Below are positions 5,368 to 64,000 of a stretch of DNA of 64,000 nucleotides, piece after piece. Made by a program: the position numbers and the translations under genes. Location of the stretch: positions 8,680,001 to 8,744,000 of the forward strand of contig NW_025963924.1 in NCBI RefSeq assembly GCF_023055435.1, in the 5' to 3' direction. This DNA is from Haliotis rufescens (Eukaryota). Under the pieces are notes generated by a model. It saw only the letters and a program-made list of their open reading frames with translations, ran no database searches and had not been told where the DNA came from. Position 1 is the first letter of the stretch; every line of letters begins with the position of its first letter.

Positions 5368-6379
5368 AACACAGCAGATATCACTCCTTGATTGAATATA
5401 GAATTAGCCATATATTTATGGTGTGCCAAGGCAGTTTATATAGTGTTCAAATACATCACGATCTATACTGTGACACCTTCTTAAATTAACGAGCTTTTTT
5501 ACCACAGCTGACAGTGTTGTCGATCCCTGTCTATGTATTAACTTGCAGCTTCGAATTCGGTGCATGTGTTTCCTTGTAGATTTGGTCCGCCACTATGCTT
5601 TTAGTGTTCGATACTGCACCCAAATGTAATACAGGTTACTTGCAATGTGAAAACACAGCTAATTATACTTTTTTTTATTATTATATGAGTTATGTTATGC
5701 ATATTTGTGATATGATAACTATGAGTCTTAATACTGTTTTAAATAAACTATGTGTACAACAATTATTAAACAGATATTATTCTTCCATACAATGTATGCT
5801 GAGTTTTTTTATTTGGCCCTGGCGAAGGATGCAAAACAACCATTGTAGTTCACACACATTGCAGATGATATCGTTTATTGTTGTTAGAAAATAAATTGTA
5901 ATTCTTCATGGCAGCGGCTCTCATCCATTCAACACAAAAGAACCATTCACTGCAACCTATAGCTACGCCTTTGTGTGCGTTCGAGTTATTCTGTAAACAT
6001 AACACAATAGTTCAAAAACTAACCTGGAACTTTTGTACTAAACAGAAGTATTTCTGTGTGTGCTTCAATACATACACCCATTTTCACTGAAAGAAAGAAC
6101 TAAACAATTATATTTTTTTACATTCTTTTGTAAAATCCGAGGCATAACTAATTTGTTTTAATTAAAATGAACCTTGACACACCCTTGTACAATGTACCTT
6201 GGAGGTGTAGTTAAAGGTCAAAGGTCAAAGAGCAGCATATGCTTCCGAATGTGAAATCGGTTTGTCGCTTGGATTTTGATGAAAGGATCTGGAGTTCTCT
6301 TATTGCATAAATAATTCTCAAAGTCTGTGACTCATACAAGTGTACTATTACGGTAGATTCGCAGGACTACATCCTGGTC

Positions 6380-6830
6380 TAGAAACTGCGAGATAGATTT
6401 TCAAAATATAAGAATAAGTATTTTAACCCGTTTGATGCTTCCTGCGATATGTTGTGGAGGGTGTCAACTAACATTCCGAAAACATTCGCCATCATGCTTC
6501 GAATATGAGGCAATATATGAAAAAACAATTCTGGTTTGTGGAAGGATATAACATTTATTAAAACGTTTTCAAAATCACACAAAAATAAGATCTCTTCTTG
6601 TGGAAATCCACGTGAAAATGATATACACGTCTTTCTTGAATGTCCCAAATACACTCATCCCAGAAATATCATGTTCACTAACATTATAACAGCTGGAAGT
6701 ACATGTACAATGCAAAATATTCTCTATGGTAAAGAATCTCTAGCTGAAAGTCACAATTATCACATTTTCAACAACATTCAAAAATATATACTGTCGACTA
6801 AAAGATTGATCATAAATATATGATATTGCT
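6380..6830 (+). mobile_element. LINE ORF2 3' fragment with zinc-knuckle-like motif (copies at about 17060-17390 and 36250-36710)
   Basis: SCGNPxENxIHVFLECPKY..PR motif, broken by stops. Confidence 0.6.
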
Positions 6831-7845: not shown

Positions 7846-7929
7846 TCACCGCCTGCACATTGTTACAGGAACGTGAACATGGTGCAAGATGAAGTCGCTG
7901 ACACTGCCGAGAAACGTCCTCCGTATCTT
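7846..7929 (-). pseudogene. Duplicated fragment of the USP last exon (with downstream flank from about 7140)
   Basis: Reads KIRRTFLGSVSDFILHHVHVPVTMCRR* and aligns to 55576-55659; the flank aligns to about 54130-55575. Confidence 0.85.
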
Positions 7930-8362
7930 ATGGAATACTAGAACGAGCATTGTCGCATCGTTGCCCTTACCAAAAACAAGCAAACAGTGTCAAAATTAAC
8001 CAAAGCCCCGACATTGTGACAATGCGACATTTTGGCCATTTGCCGCAATGTGGCGCTATAAATAATCGTTTATACTTTACGAAAGTGAAAACTTGTAATA
8101 ATTACTGCATATTTTAACAAAGAAATATTTTCATCAAAATGACGCGTTGTCGCATTGTCCCATTGTCGAGCTTCTAGTAGTTACTGCTTATTTTGAATAT
8201 TTAAACAAAACATGATCTATATGGTTACAGATGAATGCACCCAGTGAACCAACTCAGTCCCAACAATTACAAATGTGCATACATACGTCCATGAAGGAGC
8301 TATGTATGTGAGTTAAAGGTCGTCGGTAAACTGAATTTTAAAGTATTAAGTCCAATTAAGTG

Positions 8363-16711: not shown

Positions 16712-16946
16712 GGGGCGGTCGGGTAGCTCAGTGGTTAAAGCGTTCGCTCGTCCCGACCCGAGTTCGATTCCCGACATGGGTACAATGTGTGAAGCCCATT
16801 TCTGGTGAAACCCACCGTGATATTGCTGGAATATTGTTAAAAGCGGCGTTAAAGGATACTCACTCACTCACTCACTCACTCACTCACTCACTCACTCACT
16901 CACTCACTCACTCACTCACCCACTCACCCACTCACTCACTCACTCA
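16712..16946 (+). mobile_element. tRNA-derived SINE, family A, with expanded (ACTC)n tail
   Basis: A box gtagctcagtgg, B box gttcgattcc; TSD ctctttcttatga at 16699-16711 and 16947-16959; truncated paralog at about 27935-27985. Confidence 0.85.
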
Positions 16947-17559
16947 CTCTTTCTTATGAATATGGTTTTGTCGCTTATATTTTGATGAAAGGACCAGTAG
17001 TTCTCTTATTGCATAAATAATAGTCAGAGTCTGTGACTCATGCATGTGTACTGTTACGGCATGACTACATCCTGGTCTAGAAACTGCGAGATTTGGTTTG
17101 TGGAAAGGATATGACATTTATTAAAACGCCTTCAAAATCACACACAAATATTACCTTCTCTTGTGGAAATCCATGTGAAAACAATATACACGTCTTTCTT
17201 GAATGTCCCAAACACACTAGTCCCAGAAATGTCATGTTCACTAACATTATAACAGCTGGAAGTACATGTACAATGCAAAATATTCTCTATGGTGATGAAT
17301 CTCTAGCTGATAGTCACAATAATCACATTTTCAACAGCATTCACAAATATGTACTGTTGACTTATAGACTTTTCGTAAATATATAATATCGCTCTGCCAC
17401 CACTTACTACGTTGTTCGTGCATATTTTGCTTCACTTTTAACAGTTAAAAAACTAGGTACAGGCAATATGATTAATAACGAGATGACATACTCAGCGTCA
17501 TTATTGAAGAGTCACCTAGGTATATCGTGTGTCAAACATGAACATATGCCAACAAGAGT

Positions 17560-28716: not shown

Positions 28717-28800
28717 TCACCGCCTGCACATTGTTACAGGAACGTGAACATGGTGCAAGATGAAGTCGCTGACACTGCCGAGAAACGTCCTCCGTATCTT
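28717..28800 (-). pseudogene. Second duplicated fragment of the USP last exon (flank from about 28005)
   Basis: Near-identical to 7846-7929, with the same truncation point. Confidence 0.85.
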
Positions 28801-29342
28801 ATGGAATACCAGAATGGGCATTGTCGCCCTTACCAAAAACAAGCAAACCCCGACATTGTGACAATGCGACATTTTGGCCATTTGCCGCAATGTCGCGCTA
28901 TAAATAATCGTTTATACTTTACGAAAGCGTGACAATGCGCGTTGCATTGTCGCCTCATCAAACAATTCAAATATTCAAATACCAGTGGTCTTTTGTTAGT
29001 TCCAATGGATTCTAAAACCATGAATCCCATGTTGTGAGTGGCGACCCTGTGCGTATCATGCGTAACGGTATGTAAAGTATGGTTTGGTGACAAGAACGTA
29101 TCAGAATTGTCGTATTCATCTTCAAAACTGCATGTTTTACAGGCAGGACATGCTTACACCTGATTTTCAGTGATCTATTCCCATAGGTTCCATAGCTATT
29201 TTGCAACTTAGGCACAATGTCTTGTCGGATAATCGAGACTGGGTTTTCTCTAGCGTTGACATTTTTATTTACATTATCTATGTATGATAGATAAACAAGT
29301 AGGGATCAAAAAATTCGTCAGAAAAAAAGATGAGCTTTGGAA

Positions 29343-37617: not shown

Positions 37618-38701
37618 TTTTCAGGGTTTAAAACCATTTCAAAGTATAACCAATCAAATGACAGTTAACCTAATTACTGCGCATCTTTATGCAAATACTA
37701 CGGAACACAATGACGCGTTGTCGCATTGTACCATTGTCGAGCTTCTAGTAGTTACTGCTTATTTTGAATATTTAAACAAAACATGATCTATGGTTAAAGA
37801 TGAATGCATCCAGTGAACCAACTTAGTCACAACAATTGCAAATGTGCATACATACGTCCATGAAGGAGCTATTTTTGTGAGTTAAAGGTCGTCGGTAAAC
37901 TGATTTTTAAAGTATTAAGTCCAATTAAGTGTACAGTAAACGAACTCTAAGGATTCATTAGTTTTAGTTTGTTATAAGCATATACACAGCATAACTAAAG
38001 CAAATAGTCGGAACAAAAAAGTAAGTTCGTTATATCCGTCAGTTCGTTATAAGCGTCTTCGTTATAAACGTAGTTTACTGTATATGATTCAAATATAGAC
38101 ATCGCAACAGTTTTGTAAAACTCCAGAGTGAGTATGGTTTAACGCTCCTCTTAACAGTATTTCAGTTATGGCATGTCAGCTAGATGAGGGAGGAAAGTCG
38201 AAAGTCATGTTGGTCCTAAACAAAAAACATAATCAGGACGAATCGGGAACACACGCTCATAGGGTTCTGGCATGTCGAATTCATCGATTTGAGAGAATGA
38301 GCGAGTTATAATTATTTATAATAATAATAATCCGTTTGTATGTTACTTTCTCCATCCTGAATATCATGCTCGAAGCACATTATTACCCCGGCCATTCTCA
38401 TCTCCAAGGGAAGTATATATACGACCAAAGCTGCCTGTGATGTGCTGAAAGGTAATCAGCCACATTGTCATATTAGAGGCTACCCGTTTACTGCTGGCTG
38501 AACAGTGGCATATTTCAAACAAAGTCACTTGCCCAAAGCCACACACCACATGCCCATGTGTTACGTGTGCTTCGGTTTTGGACAGGACCGAGGCCCTTGA
38601 CAGACAGACAGACAGACAGTTTATTCAGTAAGAAGGCCATAGGCCCATAATACAGACAATGTTTGATTGCATGAACTACGCATGCCAAGGAAGTAGTCGA
38701 T

Positions 38702-53760: not shown

Positions 53761-55575
53761 TTAAAACTAGTGCCGTAAAGCTCGAGATAGCTGCTTTCTG
53801 ACTGACAAATGTCGACTTCTTGTCATGCATTTCATTAGTCGGTCAAAGTTCGAATTTAATGAGATTGCAGTCAATGTGAGCATACGATCGTTCATTCCAG
53901 ATGCAACTGAACTGCACTCTTGGAAGTTGAAAATGTAAAGTTTTATCTGTTAATATCTGCGTGAGCCCTCAGGAATGAGGCCGTTTACTTACAAACAAAC
54001 ACACAGTACCAGCGCTATTCCCTATGTTGTCAATGGTAGGAGAAGAAATTAACAGCATGGTTTGCACGTGCGAAATATGATTTTCATGTTCAGTTGACAT
54101 GAAAGATGTCTTCTATTTTTTCGTTCAGGTACAGGTCGAGCTTTGCGGTGTTTGTAGACCAGTGTTTAGGCGTGGCTTAAAGATAACAAGAAGGCTGATT
54201 GGATATGTAATTGTGACATTTATTAAATTCGGCTTCCAACACAAAATCTTCCTCAGATTAACATTACAATAACATGTCATAACTCTTTTATGCAATGACG
54301 TCACTCCTGTGTGCAATGACGTAAACAGACAATAACGACACATAAGATGTACTGTGTAGCCCCAAGAAACAATACTCTACAACTGAACTTTCAATATTAG
54401 CCATAAGGTTGGAAAAAATTGTAAGATGTAATTGTAACTGCATTAGAGCATTATTCTTGATGATCGGTCAGTTGTAACGATATATAAAAAAACAATACGT
54501 TATGACGTCATCGGTTGTTCATGACGTCATAAAATTAAGTTTCAATGAAGATTGGTAGGTCATGTTCTTCGCACGCACACGCACACACGCACACCACTCC
54601 GACAGAGACACATACATACACGCCAGACATCATACACACCCAAAATAAAATTATTTATTCACTTGGGTATTAACCTCACACCCGTGCTCGTGGGTTCACC
54701 AAAGTGAAAAATGTCTGAGACCCCCATCACTTCGAACTGTCCTCTCACATTAAGCTGACATGCCTTGATATAACTTGAATACTGTTAAAAGCGGCGGTAA
54801 ACCCAACACCCTCACTCACTCACTCTCATTTACTTGGGACAAATACTTCGTAATTCCTCAAAGCTCTTTGGTTATTTGAAAGTAAGGACCGTGTCTTACC
54901 ACCTACTACACTACTGCACAGGTGAATAACAAACTTCGTATATGCCGAAATCGGCAATAACTCATTCGATTCTTAACCAATTGATGGTAGTTACTGCTAC
55001 CACAATAATAGCAAACTTCGTATATACCGAATTGTCGGCAAACATGAAGTCGATTCTCAGTCTATGTGTGGTACTGACATCTATTTCTATTAAAATAACT
55101 TTGTATATAACAAATTGCATTCGACCCGTGAAGATCCGGGTTATAATAGGTCTTCAGCAACCCATGCTTGCTGTAAAAGACGTCTATGCTTTTCATAAGA
55201 GGCGACTAGTGGGATCGGGTGGTCAGCATCGCTGATTTGGTTGATGCATGTCATCGTATCCCAATTGAATGTATTGATGCTGATGATATCAATCACTGGA
55301 TTGTCTGATCCAGATTTGATTAATTACAGATATCCGTCATATAGCTGTAATATTGCTGTGTGCGGCGTTAAACAACATTTTAACAAAAACAAATTGAATT
55401 CAGGAGTTGACAGAATATTGATGGCATATATTCCTGTTTATTTATCACGGGCAATTCTAACATACATCAACTAAAATCTAAACATCCTGCAGGGATGTAA
55501 TTTCATCCTGTGTCTCCCATAACAACAAGCGGTCTCACATAGTTATACTTCAGTAATGACGAGACAGGAAGTACG

Positions 55576-55767
55576 TCACCGCCTGCACACTGTAACAGGA
55601 ACGTGAGAATGGTGCACGATGTAGTCGCTGACACTGCCGAGAAGCGTCCTCCGTATCTTCCCCACCCCACGCGCTCCAGTGACGATCAGGCTGGCGTTTT
55701 CTTCATCGGCAATACGCACGATTACCTCCCCTGGACTGCCGATCACGCTCTTCACCTTGCCTGTCAT
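55576..55767 (-). CDS. Universal stress protein (UspA-domain) gene, last exon
   Basis: PGEVIVRIADEENASLIVTGARGVGKIRRTLLGSVSDYIVHHSHVPVTVCRR* contains the USP G-x2-G-x9-GS motif; phase-0 acceptor tttcag ends at 55768. Confidence 0.92.
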   Translation of the reverse strand: MTGKVKSVIGSPGEVIVRIADEENASLIVTGARGVGKIRRTLLGSVSDYIVHHSHVPVTVCRR

Positions 55768-55782
55768 CTGAAAATAAACAGA

Positions 55783-56055
55783 GTGAGCGAGTTGGGTTTA
55801 ACGCCGCTTTTAACAGTATTCCAGTCATAGCACGGCGTGTCAGCTTAATGTGGGAGGAAAGGCCGAAGTGATGCAGGTCTCAAACGTTTACCACTTCGGT
55901 GAAACCCAAGAGCACGGGTTGGTGCTGACAAACCTAGAAACATAATCGAGGCGAACCGGGATTCGAACCTACGATCATAGGTTTCTGGCTTTCCCAAGGG
56001 ACGCAACTCTGCACAGCGAATCGCGGCGCCTCAGACGACTGGGTCAACGTGCCCC
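55783..56055 (-). mobile_element. tRNA-derived SINE, family C (degenerate copies at about 8574-8740, 30395-30545, 38127-38290, and 54670-54830 +)
   Basis: Aligns along its length with 58567-58847; TSD gaaaa(t/c)aaacaga at 55770-55782 and 56056-56068. Confidence 0.85.
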
Positions 56056-58058
56056 GAAAACAAACAGAACCATAGGTCAAGCATGTGCTAATCAACTGTG
56101 GGATTTCAACCAAACGCTCATAAACAAAAGCAGCGGTGATATACGTTTTACTAATATACTGTGACAAACAAACAAACACACAAACTGACGTCCTTAAAGA
56201 GGCTGTATCTTTATCTCATTTATCTCTGTTTGATATCTCATATAAGAAATACACGAACTCTTGGTCGTTGTTTGTCGTATAATAAAACACTGCAGGGAGA
56301 AAAAACATTCTGGGTTGCTCCCCACATGGTTTATTCTCCCTGCAGCGTTTTATTGTACGATAAACAACTCCCAATCGTCGTTCTTCAGAACAACCCTTTA
56401 CTGTTATGTCTGTATCATATTTTGCTGTCCATCCCACCCCCATTTTATGTAACAGTGCGTAATGTACCCCGCCCCCACCCGTAAAAGGTTACATGTAAGA
56501 GTTTATCATTACACTCCTACCCATAATAAACTAAACAATCCCAAAATAATGTTTGTTTGTTTGTTTGTTTGTTTATTGGTCGCACTCAGCAATATTACAG
56601 CTATATGACGGCGGTCTGTAATATAATCGAGTCTGGACCAGAAATCCAGTGAGTGACATCATGAGCATCGATCCACGCAATTGGGATCGATGACATGTAT
56701 CAACCAGATCCCGTTAGTCGCCTTTTACGACCAGCATATTCGCCTTCGTCGGCAAGTATGGGTTGCTGAAGACCTATTCTACCCCGGAATCTTCACAATG
56801 TACATTTGTGATCATTTTTGGAAACGATTCAACTAAAACTAAAACTAAAAATTTATTTTGAATGAAAATTATTTGGATTTTGGGGTTGAATATAAATATC
56901 ATCTTCCTGATTGAAACCACATGTCTCAACAACTCTCTCTGATACATATTGGCAATCTTGGACCACGGATATTTCAAATTCTTCACATGTCGAGTCCACA
57001 TGTTTTAAAAGTTGACCATAAACTTGAAACATAATTAATAAACATTCTACTCCCGTTATCCTCTAAATTATTATTCTTTGGGGCCCCTTGTCACCGCCGG
57101 CCAATAGAAACTTGAAGACGGAATGGAACTCCCTTGAATCAACGTTTATGCAAATTGTGTGATAGTTATGACATTGGAGACGAATTCCACTGTATTCTTA
57201 GATGTAAATATTTCAATGAACAAAGGGCAATGTACGTATACATTCCAAAACACTATTCCAAAAGACCAAATATGTAACAACAACAGCAATTATTTAACTG
57301 CCATAATATATCTGTCCTAAAGAAGCTATGTAAATGTGTTAACATTTTAATGAAAATTGTAAAAACTCCAGGTAAACGTCTGTCTGACGCCATGCATAAA
57401 ACTGTTTGTACCTCATCAGGTGATGCACTCGAAATAGAGTGCTATTCTATTCTGACATCTCGTTGTCATTTTTCCCCCCACTTCCCCCAACAATACTTTC
57501 AAGAATCTACAGTTTTCAAGAACATGTATGCCAGCAAGATAGATTTTACGTCCGTTTCCTAAGGTTGATGCAAAAACATGGAATTGTTGAAAATGTTTCG
57601 GTAAATCTGATTTTTCTTTCCGCTTATAAGACAGGTAAAACACACTGTTCCCCGGATTTGTCCCTCATAAAACTTTAAACTCTTACGGTTGGTGTTCAAG
57701 GGTGTTCAGTCTTGCATGGAGGACGTGGTCTCGCTCTCGCCCCTGCCATCGAATTTGTTTTAAACCTCTACAATTGTTTCACTTGAAGGTACTACCCCAT
57801 TGTATTTTATTCTTAATGGTATTTCTTACATTTAGACAGCTTACAAGCTGGATAAAACACTCTTCCTCGGGCATGGTTGAGAACGTAGACACTTTGGACT
57901 GGGGAAATCGTTTGGGCTTTCGGCTCGCGAGATTTCCCCTCACTATCGTGATTACAATCTCAATCAAGCCCTTGGAATCGTGTTTTTATCCGGTACATAA
58001 AAGTTAAATTGACCGCTCCTGGAATGCACGTGTATAAACCCCTTCCCTTCCAAAACAC

Positions 58059-58322
58059 GACCCTTGAAGATCCGGGGAGAGACAAGGTCTTGAGCAATCC
58101 ATGCTTGCCGTAAAAGGCGACTATGCTTGTAGCAAGAGGCGAATAACAGGATCGGGTGGTCAGGCTCGCTGACTTGGTTGATGAATGTCATCAATCCCAA
58201 TTGCGTAGATCGATGCTCATGGTGTCAATCACTGGATTGTCTGGTCCAGACTCGACTATTTTACAGACCGCCGTCATATAGCTGGAATATTGCTGAGTGC
58301 GGCGTTAAACAACAACCAAACA
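58059..58322 (+). mobile_element. SINE-like element, family B (other copies: 55122-55377 +, 56550-56797 -, 58891-59108 +, 59757-60024 -, 62697-62966 -)
   Basis: Shared ~270-bp consensus from gacccgtgaagatccggg to gctggaatattgctgagtgcggcgttaaacaac. Confidence 0.85.
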
Positions 58323-58360
58323 TTCCAATACATAAACTGACCGATTCCCGGACAACCACA

Positions 58361-58429
58361 AACACACACGCACACACACACACATACGCACACGCACACG
58401 CACACGCACACGCACACGCACACGCACAC
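58361..58429. repeat. (CA)n/(CACGCA)n microsatellite next to the USP donor site (another CA-rich tract at 37556-37617)
   Basis: Direct reading of the sequence. Confidence 0.9.
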
Positions 58430-58433
58430 TTAC

Positions 58434-58540
58434 CCCGGCGTCAGTGAGCAGGGCGCTGAATCCCTCCAGCAGCTTGTTCTTCTTCTTTTGTTCCTGCTCC
58501 ATCTGTTCCACCACCTGCTTGATGTCCGGACGGGCATGGC
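58434..58540 (-). CDS. USP gene, penultimate exon
   Basis: Acceptor tgttgcag| and donor |gtaagt; 107 nt, phase 1 in and phase 0 out; (G)HARPDIKQVVEQMEQEQKKKNKLLEGFSALLTDAG joins the last exon in frame. Confidence 0.8.
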
Positions 58541-58566
58541 CTGCAACAGCAGCCACAACACTGCAG

Positions 58567-58847
58567 TGAGTGATGTGAGTGAGTTGGGTTTAACGCCGCT
58601 TTTAACAGTATTCCAGTTATATCACGGCGTGTCAGCTAAATGTGGGAGGAAAGCCCGAAGTAATGCCGATCTAAGACGTTTACCACTTCGGTGAAACCCA
58701 TGCACGGGTTTTGTGCTGACAAACCAAGAAACATAATCGGGGCGAACCGGGATTCGAACCCATAATCGTAGGTGTCTGGCGTGCCCAAGGGACGCAACTC
58801 TGCAATGCGAATTGCGGCGCCTTAGACGACTGGGCCACCCGTGCTCT
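58567..58847 (-). mobile_element. tRNA-derived SINE, family C
   Basis: Head ggtggcccagtcgtctaaggcg...ggttcgaatcccgg; (ACTC)n tail; perfect 14-bp TSD ccacaacactgcag at 58553-58566 and 58848-58861. Confidence 0.88.
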
Positions 58848-59117
58848 CCACAACACTGCAGATATTTCACAGCATTAATTGAGAAACACAACCCGTGAAG
58901 TCTGGGTTTAGAATTGGGCAACCCATGCTTGTCATAAGACGCGACTAACGGGTTCGGGTGGTCAGGTTCAGTGACTTGTTTGAATGCACGTTATCATACC
59001 CTGACAGCGTGGGCTTTGCTCATAATATCAACCACTGGTTTGTCTGGCCATCATTTACAGGCAGCCGGGACATAGCTGGAAGATTGCTAAGTGCGGTGTA
59101 AAACAACACACAAGGTG

Positions 59118-59450
59118 TGGTGAAATGGGTTTTTTAACGTCGCGTTGAAGGTTATTGCACTTATGTTGTGACGTGCATGCACGTGTGTGTGTGTAGCTGC
59201 TTGTACTAGTCCGGACTGATGCTGATTTATGGTGCTAGCACACTGAGACACCATGCAACAGTTTAACATGAATACCCCACTCAGATACAGTATACTGACT
59301 CCGAGCCGACCGGTCCTTGTTATTGCCCCTTAATGCCGAGCGCCAGACAGGGCAACAACAAGTACCATCTTTTTGGTATGGCGCGGCCGGGGATAGAACC
59401 CCGGACCTTCCGCTCTCCGGGCGGACGCTCTACCCCTAGGCCACGGAGCC
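59118..59450 (-). mobile_element. tRNA-derived SINE, family D (body reminiscent of molluscan RUDI-type SINEs)
   Basis: Head ggctccgtggcctaggggtagagcg...ggttctatccccgg; tail related to families A-C. Family assignment is from recall and unverified. Confidence 0.7.
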
Positions 59451-59499
59451 TATGCACCCCTCGCCTGGCGACGTCAGTTGACCACATATAGTCTCCTAC

Positions 59500-59580
59500 C
59501 TGAGCTGAGACAGTGTTGATACTCAGGGGAGTGTACAGCGATCACGAAGTCGTCCGCCCTGTGAACGTTCTCTTTATACC
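59500..59580 (-). CDS. USP gene, internal exon (first coding exon not located)
   Basis: Acceptor tgtttcag| and donor |gtagga; 81 nt; (W)YKENVHRADDFVIAVHSPEYQHCLSS resembles metazoan USPs and its phase fits the next exon. Confidence 0.8.
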
Positions 59581-60873
59581 CTGAAACAAGTGTAAGTGAG
59601 TGAGTGAGTTGGGTTTAACGACGATTTCACAAATATTTCTCTTACATCATTTTCACAGAATACTTGTGCCGTCAAGGAACACCAGAAACAATGCACAAGC
59701 CCCTATTTGTGTAAGACACCTTTCTCACTAAAAGACACAAGTCGCACTGAAAAGTCTTTGTTTGTTTGTTTGTTGTTTAACGCCGCACTTAGCAATATTC
59801 CAGCTTTATGACGGCGGTCTGTAAATAATCGTGTATGGACCAGACAATCCAGTGAGTGACATCATGAGCATCGATCCACGCAATTGGGACACGATGACAT
59901 GCTTCAACCAATCAGCAAGCCTGACCACCCGATCCCGTGAGTCGCCTCTTACGACAAGCATAGTCACCTTTACGGCAAGAATGGGTTGCTGAAGACCTAG
60001 TCTAACCCGGGTCTTCACGGGTCTGCACTATAAAGAGATAAGTAAGGTTTTTTGAAAAAAGGGGCCGAAAATAATATTGTCTCAGGTTTTACAAAAAACA
60101 ATTTTCGCTGATCCTGAAAAAAAAAGTGTTGTCACACTCACTTATTAAATATGTATAAAAAAAAATTCCAAAAAAGTCGAAATCTTTCCTGACATCGCTT
60201 AGATTATTATTTTGGTTATGATTTATATAAGCATAATCAAGTACCAATACTTATAGGTACAGAGTGTAGAATAGACCGCACCCTGTCAGTTCACATTCTC
60301 AGTCTACCATATATTTCCTCACAAAGAGCCATTCACAGTTTTATTATCATCAAATATTGAATTACGGTCAGATGAAACGTTCTTGGCTGCTACCCGGCAA
60401 GCAAAATATGACCCTATTATTTACTTGTTATCGCCACACGCTGTACAAACAGGCCACAGTAACCAGGCGTTCTGCAGCCGCTCATCAAAAGGGATGAGTC
60501 AGTGAGTGAGCGAGGGAACGGTGTTTACGTATGGAGAAACCATTACACCGCAGGAATGGTATGTCCAACTTATAAACCGCTATCCATTAATCTATGTCAT
60601 TTTTGGAGCTTATATTTACGCGGTATACGGGTCGCAAATAAGCGCGGTATAACAGTTGTTATCGCGGCCCGCTGCGCGGACTGCACGTGCAGAAGAGGGC
60701 TGTACGTGCAGATAGAACCGCGTGCGTCGTACCACATGGCATTGTGTCGTTGACTGTTCACAAGAGAGGATGTCTGACGATGACGATATTTTCCTTACTC
60801 AAAGTAAGTTAATTGATGAAAATTCAGCAGAAAAGGATGAGGATGACTTTTGTTTCCGTTTTGGTGACCTTTG

Positions 60874-61377: not shown

Positions 61378-64000
61378 ATATGTACTTAACCGTGCCGTAC
61401 TGAGCGCATGGGGACTCGTTTCTCAAAGTGAGTGAGTGGGTATGGTTTTACGCCGCTTTTAGCTAAAAGCGGCGTAAAACCATACTCACTCACTCACACA
61501 TATAGCTGGAATATTGTTGAGAACGGCGTTCAACAAGAAAAAAAAACATTCTTCCTTCAAACGAGTGAGTGCGGTTCAGAGTCGCTTTTCGCCTTCTTAC
61601 ATCCCAGAGTAGATAGGACTGGCTAAGAAAGGAACTAAAATTGACACATTATCCATGTTGGGAATTGAACCTGTGTCTCCGTCTGGCGAGCGAAGTGCGT
61701 GCAGTTCAACACGGAACATTTTCTTATCAATCCTGATAAGGTGCAGGGTTTTCCAAAATGAAGCTGTGGTCAATAAGGATTACGTAATTTATGAATATTA
61801 CTCCGGATAGCAGCGCTATAAGGAGGTCAGTTGACCTGGCTGGTATGACCCCTCTGCGCTTAGAGTCAGGTGGTCAGTTGATTAGAGAGCTTCCACAAGA
61901 TACTGTTGATAAGTTATTTGCAGTGTCTTTTCTGTACATTAAACTCACAAAAACTTAACAGTGTAAGGGCATAATAAACTAATTATATGATAATCATCCA
62001 GACTTATCATCCAAAAACAGTGCAGTTCACCTTGACATGAAGTTAACAGCTTACAACACCAGCAAATACAGAAACATAGAAAAGGACTGAAAACCAACAC
62101 TAAAAATTTAATAATTTGAACAAAATACCATACCATCATAACGCGAAACATACATACCAAAGTTCAGCTCCCTCAGTTTGGTAATTTCAATAGAGAAGAA
62201 ATTGACAGAGCCAAATTTTGAGAAGAGCATGGTCAAAAGAAAGAAAAAAATGAAAATACTGCCCAAACCGGAATATGCATGTTGATTCCCAACACGAACG
62301 ATCCACAAATAGCGAGTGAATGTTATCGTACAAACAGGGAACGTGAAAATCATTGCGAGGGATCGCAATAATGTATTTTCTTACCATAAGTACGTAGATA
62401 TGTACATAAAATATTGAAGTATATATAAAACTGCTGATAGATACGTTCAACACTGATTACTGTCATACACTGGTTTCTTCTCATATATAGCTAGGGGCAT
62501 GATAGTGTATTCATTACACCGTATCGATTATATATCAGTTTGCGAAAAACAGAATGATTGAACTGAGCTGATTAATACTGTGAGTAGGTCACTTTATATC
62601 GAACCGATGAAACGAACTGGTTAGAATATTTCCGACGACGCCATAGCTGATCGTATATGACTTGGCACGGATCGTTCTTCGTTTGTTCAGTCAAGGATTT
62701 GTTTGTTTGTTGTGTTTAACGCCGCACTCAGCCATATTCCAGCTATATGACGGCGGTCTGTAAAATAATCGAGTCTGGACCAGACAATCCAGTGATTGAC
62801 ATCACGAGCATCGATCCACGCAATTGGGATACGATGACATGCTTCAACCAAGTCAGCGAGTCTGACTACCCGATCCCGTTAGTCGCCTCTTACGACAAGC
62901 ATATTCACCTTTTACGGCAAGCATGGGTTGCTGAAGACCTATTCTACCCCGGATATTAACGGGTCGTTCAGTCTATGAAGTGCCCGGTCCACACTCGATG
63001 ACGTACAGCGGCCGAATAATGCTGGACTTTGCGGCGTAAAGCTCCATTCACTCATCAATCTGTAGCTCTCATCAATCCGCGTCTGTCTGGCGTGCGGAAG
63101 ATTGGTGCTTCGATCAACGCCCACGTCATACCAACATTGAATGATTGAGTACGGTTTTACGCCGCTTTTAGGAATATTCCAGCAATATCAAGCGAGGTAC
63201 ACCAGAAATGGGCTTCACACATTGTACCCATGTCGGGAATCGAACCCAATTATACAGGATGATGTTCATTTCAATTTCTCACTGGAGCGACGGGATGTTA
63301 GTTTGAGCTCAGCATTATCTGTTTTAATGTTTAGGATCTCAATTATTTCATCCACAACGGACAGGTTCACATCATTTTATTTTTTCCGTGGAACATGATA
63401 AGCTTTATATTTATTGTAGAAACAATACACACACCCTCCAAAAAGAAAAATCAATTGAAAAATTGTTTAGACAAAGAATGTGATTTTTTAATGACGTCAT
63501 AGCTGAAATGGATTGATAACAAGTCTCCGTCGCCACACGTGCAGCTATTGCACGCCATGGGAATTCCGTGCAAAAAAAGCTCTGGGGTGTTCAGCACTGC
63601 CGCAGAAGACGTTTGTTGATAGAACCCATTATCAGATCGCTGGAAGATGGTTGTTCTAGGCAAGGCACAGCAAACGCCAGACTCGGGAAGAATGCCAGAA
63701 AACCAGTCGAGGAAATGAAACGTAATTGGCTGAGAGTAGAGGCCATTCTGTCGTAATGTGATTACATAGAGAAATCAATATTGTGCTGAATGTGTTGACA
63801 GCCGTGATTGGGACTAGAATACCTGTTAAGCATGTCGAGTTGGGAACGGAGAATTGGAGGTATGGCTTCCTCGATCATCCAGTGTATTATAAACCCATTG
63901 TTTCAGGAAAGATTACACAATTAAGGATTCACTGTATATTTTTTTCGGTTTATTGAGGTATGAATCGAAAAACCGATGTGCAAACCGTATGAATCCGCGA

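What the first reader, a model, noticed from the sequence alone, without database searches (positions are those of the whole stretch)
55768..59620. All three USP splice acceptors have a sense-oriented SINE (ACTC)n tail at branch-point distance
Seen: the tail cgttaaacccaactc(a/g)ctcac lies just upstream of each acceptor on the gene strand. CTCAC adenines are at -17 (55784), at -27/-36/-40 (58567, 58576, 58580) and at -17/-21/-25 (59597, 59601, 59605). Two are full family C SINEs with different TSDs, so they are independent insertions; the third is a tail remnant. Known: CTCAC fits the yUnAy branch consensus, and insertions this close to acceptors are usually deleterious. Inference: the SINE tail supplies a replacement branch point and makes acceptor-proximal insertion tolerable, or the element targets such sites. 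On the other strand the same tail reads GTGAGT, a donor consensus.
Basis: partly seen in the sequence, partly recalled or inferred. Interest (0 to 1): 0.75.

Follow-up and report, generated by a model that had tools for sequence, protein, structure and literature searches.

The report
SINE tails sit at three branch sites
Three separate copies of one short mobile element landed just upstream of all three splice acceptors of an expressed stress-protein gene, the gene is still spliced correctly, and so the element's own 3' end probably now serves as the branch point.

Summary
The only three exact CGTTAAACCCAACTC tails in the 64-kb window lie on the gene strand, with CTCAC adenines at -17, -27/-36/-40 and -17/-21/-25 from the three acceptors of a four-exon USP gene. 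Two are full 273-281-nt SINEs with their own target-site duplications, 5-6% diverged and sharing no derived changes. The third is a 3' fragment.

RNA-like contigs from four runs join the exons exactly at these acceptors.

In two introns the SINE pushes the old branch region about 280 nt away, so the branch point must now lie in the SINE's 3' end. Whether it is the tail CTCAC or the neighbouring TTAAAC/CCAAC was not mapped.

Genome-wide (24,365 such tails), acceptor-like words are modestly enriched just after tails: TTNCAG 1.18-fold and TTNCAGG 1.41-fold against two control words. That is about 216 extra sites, 46% with G at +1. Real exons (CUB, OATP, CoA-transferase, RING) follow 3-4 of 25 sampled cases.

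Flanks show no targeting of pyrimidine tracts. None of 31 paralogous acceptors carries such a tail, so three of three in one gene remains unexplained.

Other first-stage notes report the same pattern elsewhere in this genome; they are unchecked. It is a new variant of a known theme.

The parts
59500..59580 (-). USP exon A (second coding exon, 81 nt, phase 1 at both ends)
   Evidence: Read. The frame gives YKENVHRADDFVIAVHSPEYQHCLSS. Homologous exons with the same boundary occur in 10 paralogs. The RNA-like contig of X2 covers 59499-59580 and leaves the genome at 59580.
59596..59620 (-). Site A: terminal 25 nt of the SINE (3' core plus tail), CTCAC adenines at -25, -21, -17. A decayed continuation may reach about 59650.
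   Evidence: These 25 nt are 25/25 identical to the family consensus. The 29 nt upstream are 19/29 identical. Anchored identity of the 45 nt upstream is 20/45, against 12.4 +/- 2.9 in shuffles (33 of 5000 shuffles reach it).
58541..59499 (-). Intron 2 (959 nt, GT..AG)
   Evidence: The joint 58539/59499 (cut +1), ends CT..AC on the plus strand, appears in one contig in each of 4 runs.
58567..58847 (-). Site B: full-length SINE (281 nt), tail at 58567-58595, CTCAC adenines at -40, -36, -27
   Evidence: It shows 17 mismatches in 280 aligned positions (6.1%) against the consensus of 67 genomic copies.
58848..58861 (-). Site B upstream target-site duplication
   Evidence: Identical 14-mer at 58553-58566.
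58553..58566 (-). Site B downstream target-site duplication. It holds an AG at -22/-21 and is followed by 12 nt and the acceptor AG.
58434..58540 (-). USP exon B (107 nt)
   Evidence: Contig pieces cover 58440-58539 in 4 runs; the last 5-6 letters lie in a stretch the read tool skipped as repeat.
55768..58433 (-). Intron 3 (2666 nt, GT..AG)
   Evidence: The same contigs run from 58440-58539 to 55300-55768 with 5 record letters between. These fit 58439-58435, with a 1-nt ambiguity at the junction.
55783..56055 (-). Site C: full-length SINE (273 nt), tail at 55783-55803, CTCAC adenine at -17
   Evidence: It shows 14 mismatches in 271 positions (5.2%). Contigs of X1 (56014-56453) and X8 (56023-56173) bridge its 5' junction, so the copy is present in organisms A and D too.
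56056..56068 (-). Site C upstream target-site duplication
   Evidence: 13-mer repeated at 55770-55782 with one G/A difference.
55770..55782 (-). Site C downstream target-site duplication. This is the present pyrimidine tract and is followed directly by the acceptor AG (55769-55768).
55579..55767 (-). USP exon C, coding part (62 codons plus stop); the transcript runs on to at least 55300
   Evidence: Pfam Usp, E 3.3e-19, profile positions 83-141 of 141. Contigs cover 55300-55768.

Best explanation
An (ACTC)n-tailed SINE of about 280 nt, apparently tRNA-related by eye, inserted three separate times in the gene's orientation. Each insertion fell into the last 13-25 nt of one of the three introns of an expressed universal-stress-protein gene.

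The insertions look like ordinary LINE-type target-primed reverse transcription. They have 13-14-nt target-site duplications starting with TC, which is microhomology to the tail. Because the duplication recreates the pyrimidine tract and leaves the AG untouched, the acceptor survives.

The original branch region is now about 280 nt upstream in introns 2 and 3. The spliceosome must therefore use an adenine inside the SINE's 3' end. The tail CTCAC (yUnAy) lies at -17 to -27, and the core TTAAAC/CCAAC just upstream is an alternative.

A sense copy of this SINE therefore brings its own branch site. That makes an otherwise damaging position tolerable, and across the genome such copies persist, or keep an intact end, slightly more often than expected.

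Shown: positions, independence of the copies, and correct splicing. Inferred: which adenine is used, and why three such events share one gene.
For: Copies B and C are 6.1% and 5.2% from the consensus and share 0 derived positions.

One spliced contig in each of 4 runs (3 organism labels) joins 59500/58540 and 58434/55767. The X2 contig has 0 differences and ends on 59580, with 87 further letters; exon 1 has 85 coding nt. Contig word depth is 127-347 for the spliced exon contigs against 2-6 for the single contigs laid on unique intron stretches.

Intron positions are old: the same boundaries occur in paralogs without the SINE.

Genome counts after the 19-nt tail anchor:
- TTNCAG: 1388 at gap 0-30 against 1479 at gap 100-130.
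- TTNCAGG: 336, 321 (gap 31-61), 300.
- Controls: TTNGCA 744/951 and TTNGAC 696/866.
- Ratio of ratios: 1.18 (z 3.3) and 1.41 (z 4.0).
- Excess: 216 +/- 63 sites, of which 46% have G at +1 against 20% background.

Of the first 25 near motifs on contig 1, Pfam supports exons right after the AG in L126 (CUB, 28.4 bits), L132 (OATP, 111.6 bits) and L121 (CoA_transf_3, 18.6 bits, below cut-off). L138 has a RING exon 48 nt after the AG. The last CTCAC adenine is at -17, -22 and -19 in L126, L132 and L138.

At site A the terminal 25 nt are perfect while the 29 nt before them are 19/29 identical.
Against: - No branch point was mapped.
- CTCAC is not among the yTnAy candidates in the -15 to -44 window of the 32 paralog acceptor rows, where TTGAC, TTTAT and TTAAT dominate.
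- In L121 there are AG dinucleotides between the tail and the acceptor, so the tail is unlikely to be the branch site there.
- The sample comparison alone is not significant: 3-4 real exons in 25 near motifs against 1-2 in 41 control motifs, binomial p 0.04-0.28 depending on the number of tails scanned.
- The genome test uses acceptor-like words, not annotated acceptors, and only exact tails. Purifying selection on used tails and insertion bias therefore cannot be separated.
- None of 31 distinct paralogous acceptors has such a tail within 40 nt, so tolerance alone does not explain three in one gene. The conditional chance is 2.6e-4 for the two full copies and 6e-7 for all three.
Confidence: 0.6

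Rival explanations
1. The insertions are tolerated and neutral, and the tail itself is irrelevant. The branch point is supplied by other SINE-derived or target-derived adenines: TTAAAC or CCAAC of the 3' core, or the A at -22 inside the site B duplication. The three-fold coincidence is a rare accident, picked out because a reader was looking for oddities.
For: Several yUnAy-like or near-consensus motifs lie at -22 to -32. Paralogs use TTGAC/TTAAT-type motifs and never CTCAC. The sample-based enrichment is not significant by itself. (ACTC)n-type tails of several SINE families are common locally: roughly 7-9 clusters on the minus strand of the window.
Against: The chance of three of three is 1.3e-11 per gene for this tail. 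Even given one sense copy in each of the three introns it is 6e-7. The genome-wide excess has the +1 G signature of real acceptors. At site A the terminal 25 nt are intact next to decayed sequence.
Confidence: 0.2
2. The SINE or its LINE partner integrates preferentially at 3' splice regions, through DNA sequence, structure or transcription-coupled nicking. The pattern then reflects insertion bias rather than tolerance or selection.
For: There is a modest excess of acceptor-like words right after tails. Human Alu insertions cluster in hot spots and hit 3' splice sites in NF1, where 4 of 14 Alu insertions fell in the AG or the pyrimidine tract (PMC3219598, passages read). Other first-stage notes in this genome report the same pattern (unchecked).
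Against: Flanks of 100 random copies show only 37-47% T at +1 to +4 (background 30%) and about 50% pyrimidines beyond that. 56 of 67 full copies have ordinary 8-16-nt duplications, mostly starting TC[A/T]. None of 31 paralogous acceptors with similar sequence context is occupied.
Confidence: 0.13
3. The exon model is wrong or the locus is a dead copy, so the acceptors are not real.
For: None found. Exons A and B alone give no Usp hit in Pfam.
Against: Spliced contigs appear in 4 runs with exact junctions and GT..AG ends. Exon C has a Usp hit with E 3.3e-19. The frames are open, and intron positions are conserved in paralogs.
Confidence: 0.02

Closest known systems
Disease-causing SINE insertions just upstream of acceptors in dogs: FAM161A c.1758-15_-16ins238; HCRTR2, 35 bp upstream; PMEL/SILV, 9 bp upstream (PMC3976383, discussion passages read; Lin 1999 and Clark 2006 seen only as citations there)
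   Same: A SINE of a few hundred nt lands 9-35 nt upstream of an acceptor and moves the branch sequence hundreds of nt away.
   Different: Those insertions cause exon skipping and disease. Here all three acceptors are used correctly, and at least copy C is shared by three organism labels.
Branch points inside exonized inverted Alu elements (Mercer et al. 2015, PMC4315302, passages read; its Supplemental Fig. 8 not seen)
   Same: A motif carried by a SINE serves as the branch site; 154 mapped branch points are associated with exonized Alus.
   Different: There the Alu is antisense, the motif is internal (CUAAU next to the poly-T) and a new exon is created. Here the SINE is in sense, the candidate motif is the microsatellite tail or 3' core, and a pre-existing constitutive exon is served.
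Transposed elements that introduce or remove branch-point competitors (OGDH study, PMC7969005, passages read)
   Same: The idea that SINEs carry many branch-like URA motifs and 'may supply new BPs' is tested there with MIR inserts in reporters.
   Different: That is a reporter-based mammalian case of distant branch points. It does not show natural replacement of the branch site at several acceptors of one gene.
L1-endonuclease insertion hot spots in human NF1 (PMC3219598, passages read)
   Same: Retroelement insertions cluster within one gene, and 4 of 14 Alu insertions hit the AG or pyrimidine tract of 3' splice sites.
   Different: Those are new pathogenic alleles explained by the T-rich L1 target. 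Here the copies are old and tolerated, and the element's target preference is only TC[A/T].

Membership tests
LINE-mobilised SINE (non-autonomous non-LTR retroposon) | Flanking target-site duplications of variable sequence | tested here: met
   Sites B and C. 56 of 67 full-length genomic copies have a duplication of 8 or more matching nt.
LINE-mobilised SINE (non-autonomous non-LTR retroposon) | High copy number with a short-repeat 3' tail and 5' truncated copies | tested here: met
   24,365 exact 21-mer tails. Tail length is 10-37 nt. 67 of 100 sampled copies start within 5 nt of the reference 5' end and 75 of 100 within 25 nt; the rest are 5' truncated.
LINE-mobilised SINE (non-autonomous non-LTR retroposon) | Head derived from tRNA with Pol III boxes | tested here: inconclusive
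   ARAGORN and Rfam call no tRNA in the heads at sites B and C. They call only a different SINE head at 59379-59450. The box-like motifs are seen by eye only.
LINE-mobilised SINE (non-autonomous non-LTR retroposon) | 3' end shared with a partner LINE | not tested
   Several SINE families in the window share the 3' module. No LINE 3' end was compared.
Transposon-derived branch point | Element lies between the former branch region and the AG that is used | tested here: met
   Sites B and C: the SINE occupies -14 to -288 and -27 to -307. The acceptors are used.
Transposon-derived branch point | Branch adenine mapped inside the element | not testable with these tools
   Only assembled contigs were available and the one read-laying run is spent. 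No lariat reads.
Universal stress protein (Pfam PF00582) | Match to the family profile above the curated cut-off | tested here: met
   Exon C scores 70.3 bits against a cut-off of 24. The exons were searched apart; the joined protein was not searched.
Introner-like element (transposon that creates the intron) | Intron ends coincide with element ends and the intron is absent from relatives | tested here: not met
   The same intron positions occur in 10 (exon A) and 19 (exon C) paralogs that lack the SINE. The donors are not SINE-derived.

The most novel reading that the evidence does not exclude
This SINE family is a portable branch-site module. Its (ACUC)n end is preferentially integrated or retained in the branch-point-to-AG interval, and it has replaced the native branch sites of a few hundred acceptors in this genome. 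In this stress gene all three acceptors now depend on the same SINE-derived sequence. That could place the whole gene's splicing under one common control, for example a factor that binds CU/CA-rich tails, or stress-dependent intron retention.
Probability: 0.15. Interest if true: 0.8.

Novelty: new variant of a known kind. Interest (0 to 1): 0.58.

Why it matters
Insertions between the branch point and the AG are textbook splice-killing mutations. A common SINE that carries its own branch site in its tail would explain how mobile elements can occupy the most constrained part of introns without harm. It would also add a class of lineage-specific, repeat-derived branch points in a mollusc-like genome. 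This locus is a natural test case, with three acceptors of one small expressed gene. It makes the question directly testable by lariat mapping or minigenes.

Tried and rejected
- Exon 1 was sought in the window above 59620 and not found. It lies in L101.
- Targeting of pyrimidine tracts by the integration machinery is rejected: flank composition is near background.
- Copy B being a copy of copy C, or local hopping, is rejected: 0 shared derived positions.
- An introner-type origin of the introns is rejected.
- A family-wide property of USP acceptors is rejected: 0 of 31 distinct paralog acceptors has the tail within 40 nt. One (L119) has it ending about 65 nt upstream. CAAA-tailed SINEs end at -52 to -80 in L108, L109 and L112.
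- Acceptors picked by eye among the 100 random tails did not hold up. L045 is followed by a transposase-like frame by eye, with no Pfam hit. L014 has stops in all frames.
- The first hexamer comparison (near 1388 against far 1479) looked like no enrichment. It turned into a modest one only after correcting for the part of the near window filled by the tail itself, using two control words.
- The sample-based rate comparison stayed non-significant, and the sample could not be enlarged.
- Pfam found nothing for L081, L076, L088, L135 and L045.
- ARAGORN and Rfam did not recognise the head of this SINE.
- Literature searches found no paper describing sense SINE tails as branch sites in molluscs. 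That holds for the searched library only, and supplements were not seen.
- The joined (spliced) protein was deliberately not built or searched. Exons were handled one by one.
Full report
OBSERVATION. On the minus strand the window holds three coding exons: A 59580..59500, B 58540..58434 and C 55767..55579. Exon C matches Pfam Usp with E 3.3e-19. Exons A and B alone give no Usp hit.

The 15-mer CGTTAAACCCAACTC occurs exactly three times in the window, all on the minus strand, at 59606-59620, 58581-58595 and 55789-55803. With up to two mismatches there are 5 matches, against 0.07 expected. The other two, at 38130 (minus) and 54795 (plus), are decayed copies away from exons.

Counting back from each acceptor, the CTCAC adenines are at:
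- -17 (55784);
- -27/-36/-40 (58567, 58576, 58580);
- -17/-21/-25 (59597, 59601, 59605).

No further USP exon lies in the window above 59620. The first coding exon is in the adjacent DNA, at L101 about 6329-6413 on the minus strand. It has 85 coding nt ending T|GTAAGT. The coding region thus has three acceptors, and each has a tail.

THE GENE IS SPLICED THERE. The runs found were all assembled contigs whose RNA nature is a guess. Laid on 55300-60300, each of the four chosen runs (X1, X2, X6, X8; organism labels A, B, D) has one contig that covers 55300/55354-55768 and then 58440-58539. In X2 it also covers 59499-59580.

- The joint 58539/59499 (cut +1; skipped ends CT..AC on the plus strand, that is GT..AG) is listed in all four runs.
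- Across intron 3 the records have 5 letters between the two pieces. These fit 58439-58435, which the tool skipped as repeat, with a one-letter ambiguity at the junction.
- The X2 contig has no differences from the window. It stops on the genome at 59580 with 87 letters left, which fits exon 1.
- Contig word depth is 127-347 for these spliced contigs and 2-6 for the single contigs laid on unique intron stretches.

A processed DNA copy cannot be strictly excluded from contigs alone, but the depth contrast speaks for RNA.

THE ELEMENT. 100 genomic copies with an exact 25-mer tail were fetched.
- 67 are full length (start within 5 nt of the reference 5' end), and 56 of these have a target-site duplication of 8 or more matching nt, mostly starting TC[A/T].
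- Their majority consensus is 282 nt, and the median divergence of the 67 is 3.2%.
- Site B (58847..58567) is 6.1% diverged and site C (56055..55783) 5.2%. They share no derived position.
- Their duplications differ: 58861-58848 / 58566-58553 and 56068-56056 / 55782-55770.
- Contigs of X1 and X8 bridge the 5' junction of copy C, so that insertion is shared by organisms A and D.

Site A keeps only the 3' end. Its last 25 nt are 25/25 identical to the consensus. The 29 nt before them are 19/29 identical, and the 45 nt before are 20/45, against 12.4 +/- 2.9 in shuffles (33 of 5000 reach it). This may be an old copy whose end stayed intact, or a short truncated copy. I cannot tell which.

ARAGORN and Rfam do not call a tRNA in this SINE's head. 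Several SINE families in the window share its 3' module.

WHAT THIS IMPLIES. This paragraph is inference. At site C the duplication is the pyrimidine tract itself and ends 2 nt before the exon. At site B it ends 12 nt before the AG. Whatever branch site these introns used before now lies about 280 nt further upstream, behind a SINE that is full of AG dinucleotides. Since the acceptors are used, a branch adenine within the last 15-45 nt is required, and that stretch is SINE sequence. At site B it could also be the A at -22 inside the duplication.

The tail CTCAC fits yUnAy. TTAAAC and CCAAC of the core lie at -25 to -32 at site C. At site B an AG sits at -22/-21. It would be skipped if the branch is at -27, but would compete if the branch were at -36 or -40.

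In 32 paralog acceptor rows (one gene seen twice), 22 have a yTnAy motif with A at -15 to -44. TTGAC, TTTAT and TTAAT lead, and CTCAC does not occur.

CHANCE.
- The 21-mer tail occurs 24,365 times in 1.334 Gb, giving 1.17 expected per window.
- A sense tail falls in a 26-nt branch window of a given acceptor with probability 2.4e-4, so three of three has probability 1.3e-11.
- Given one sense copy somewhere in each intron, the probability is 2.6e-4 for introns 2 and 3 and 6e-7 with intron 1.
- (ACTC)n tails of all families are denser locally, which softens these figures but does not remove them.

GENOME-WIDE TESTS.
(a) Flanks after 100 random tails are 37-47% T at +1 to +4 (background 30%) and otherwise near 50% pyrimidine. 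There is no pyrimidine-tract targeting.

(b) Counts with the 19-nt anchor, a gap and a word:
- TTNCAG: 1388 (gap 0-30) and 1479 (gap 100-130).
- TTNCAGG: 336, 321 (gap 31-61) and 300.
- Controls: TTNGCA 744 and 951; TTNGAC 696 and 866.

The controls give near/far ratios of 0.78 and 0.80. This matches the share of the near window not filled by the tail itself. Against them TTNCAG is enriched 1.18-fold (z 3.3) and TTNCAGG 1.41-fold (z 4.0). The excess is 216 +/- 63 and 98 sites, so 46% of the excess has G at +1 against 20% in the far window. That is the signature expected of real acceptors.

(c) Of the first 24 near anchors on contig 1 (25 motifs), Pfam supports an exon beginning at the AG in three loci:
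- L126: CUB, E 2.2e-6.
- L132: OATP, E 4e-32.
- L121: CoA_transf_3, E 1.1e-3, below the cut-off.

L138 has a RING exon whose frame opens 48 nt after the AG. Of 41 control motifs lying 60-330 nt after the 100 random tails, L020 has an Aldedh fragment (E 8e-5, below the cut-off) and L081 has a long frame without a Pfam hit. The rate ratio is 2.5-9 depending on assumptions and is not significant alone. Scaled up, 3-4 of 25 gives 167-222 sites, close to the excess in (b).

In L126, L132 and L138 the last CTCAC adenine is at -17, -22 and -19 with no AG in between. In L121 AGs intervene, so its branch site is probably not the tail.

PARALOGS. 26 matches to exon C exist in the genome, and 19 loci were fetched. 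The intron positions before exons A and C are conserved. None of 31 distinct paralog acceptors has this tail within 40 nt. The pattern is therefore specific to this copy, and I have no tested explanation for the clustering.

COMPARISON.
- Branch sites supplied by SINEs are known for exonized antisense Alus (PMC4315302) and were proposed and tested for MIRs in reporters (PMC7969005).
- SINE insertions 9-35 nt upstream of acceptors are classic splice-disrupting mutations in dogs (PMC3976383).
- Alu insertions cluster and hit 3' splice sites in NF1 (PMC3219598).
- Mollusc SINE papers that I searched for the words (PMC4758252, PMC11481361; passages only) do not discuss splice signals.

For all these papers I read search listings and found passages, not whole texts or supplements.

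LIMITS.
- No annotation and no lariat data were available.
- Only exact tails were counted.
- Acceptor-like words are a proxy for real acceptors.
- Earlier first-stage notes on other pieces of this genome describe the same pattern. They are unchecked leads, and they prompted the genome-wide test.

Noticed in passing
window 56258-56377: A 120-nt hairpin-forming inverted repeat in intron 3 matches the miRNA-precursor model MIR1509 on both strands, far below its gathering score (40 and 35 bits against 87). It is probably a small foldback or MITE-like repeat.
   Followed up: no
window 58349-58430: A GT/GC-rich microsatellite (GTGTGCGT-like units) starts about 5 nt after the donor of exon B. The read tool skipped it as repeat.
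   Followed up: no
window 61427-61500: Two SINE 3' ends of a related family (GCGGCGTAAAACCATAC plus ACTC tail) lie head to head and form a near-perfect palindrome.
   Followed up: no
window 59379-59450: A tRNA-Ser(GGA)-like sequence is called by ARAGORN and Rfam (36.8 bits). It is the head of a different SINE lying in sense inside intron 2.
   Followed up: partly
window 16858-16947: A 90-nt (ACTC)n array lies on the plus strand at the end of a SINE 3' module. It shows that these tails can expand like microsatellites.
   Followed up: no
window 7849-7932 and 28720-28803: Two short minus-strand matches to the last 28 residues of USP exon C (79% identity) lie far from the gene. They are possibly exon fragments carried along with the duplicated TLR region.
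   Followed up: no
L108, L109 (exon A) and L112 (exon C) paralog loci: Sense SINEs with (CAAA)n tails end 52-80 nt upstream of paralog acceptors and never closer. This would fit a tail that cannot serve as a branch site, but the numbers are tiny.
   Followed up: no
L124 and L125 (G000 contig 1, about 14.41 Mb): A duplicated locus where the tail is followed within about 45 nt by what reads, on the other strand, as an exon end with a CAG|GTAAGT donor. The tail there would be antisense next to a donor. Seen by eye only.
   Followed up: no
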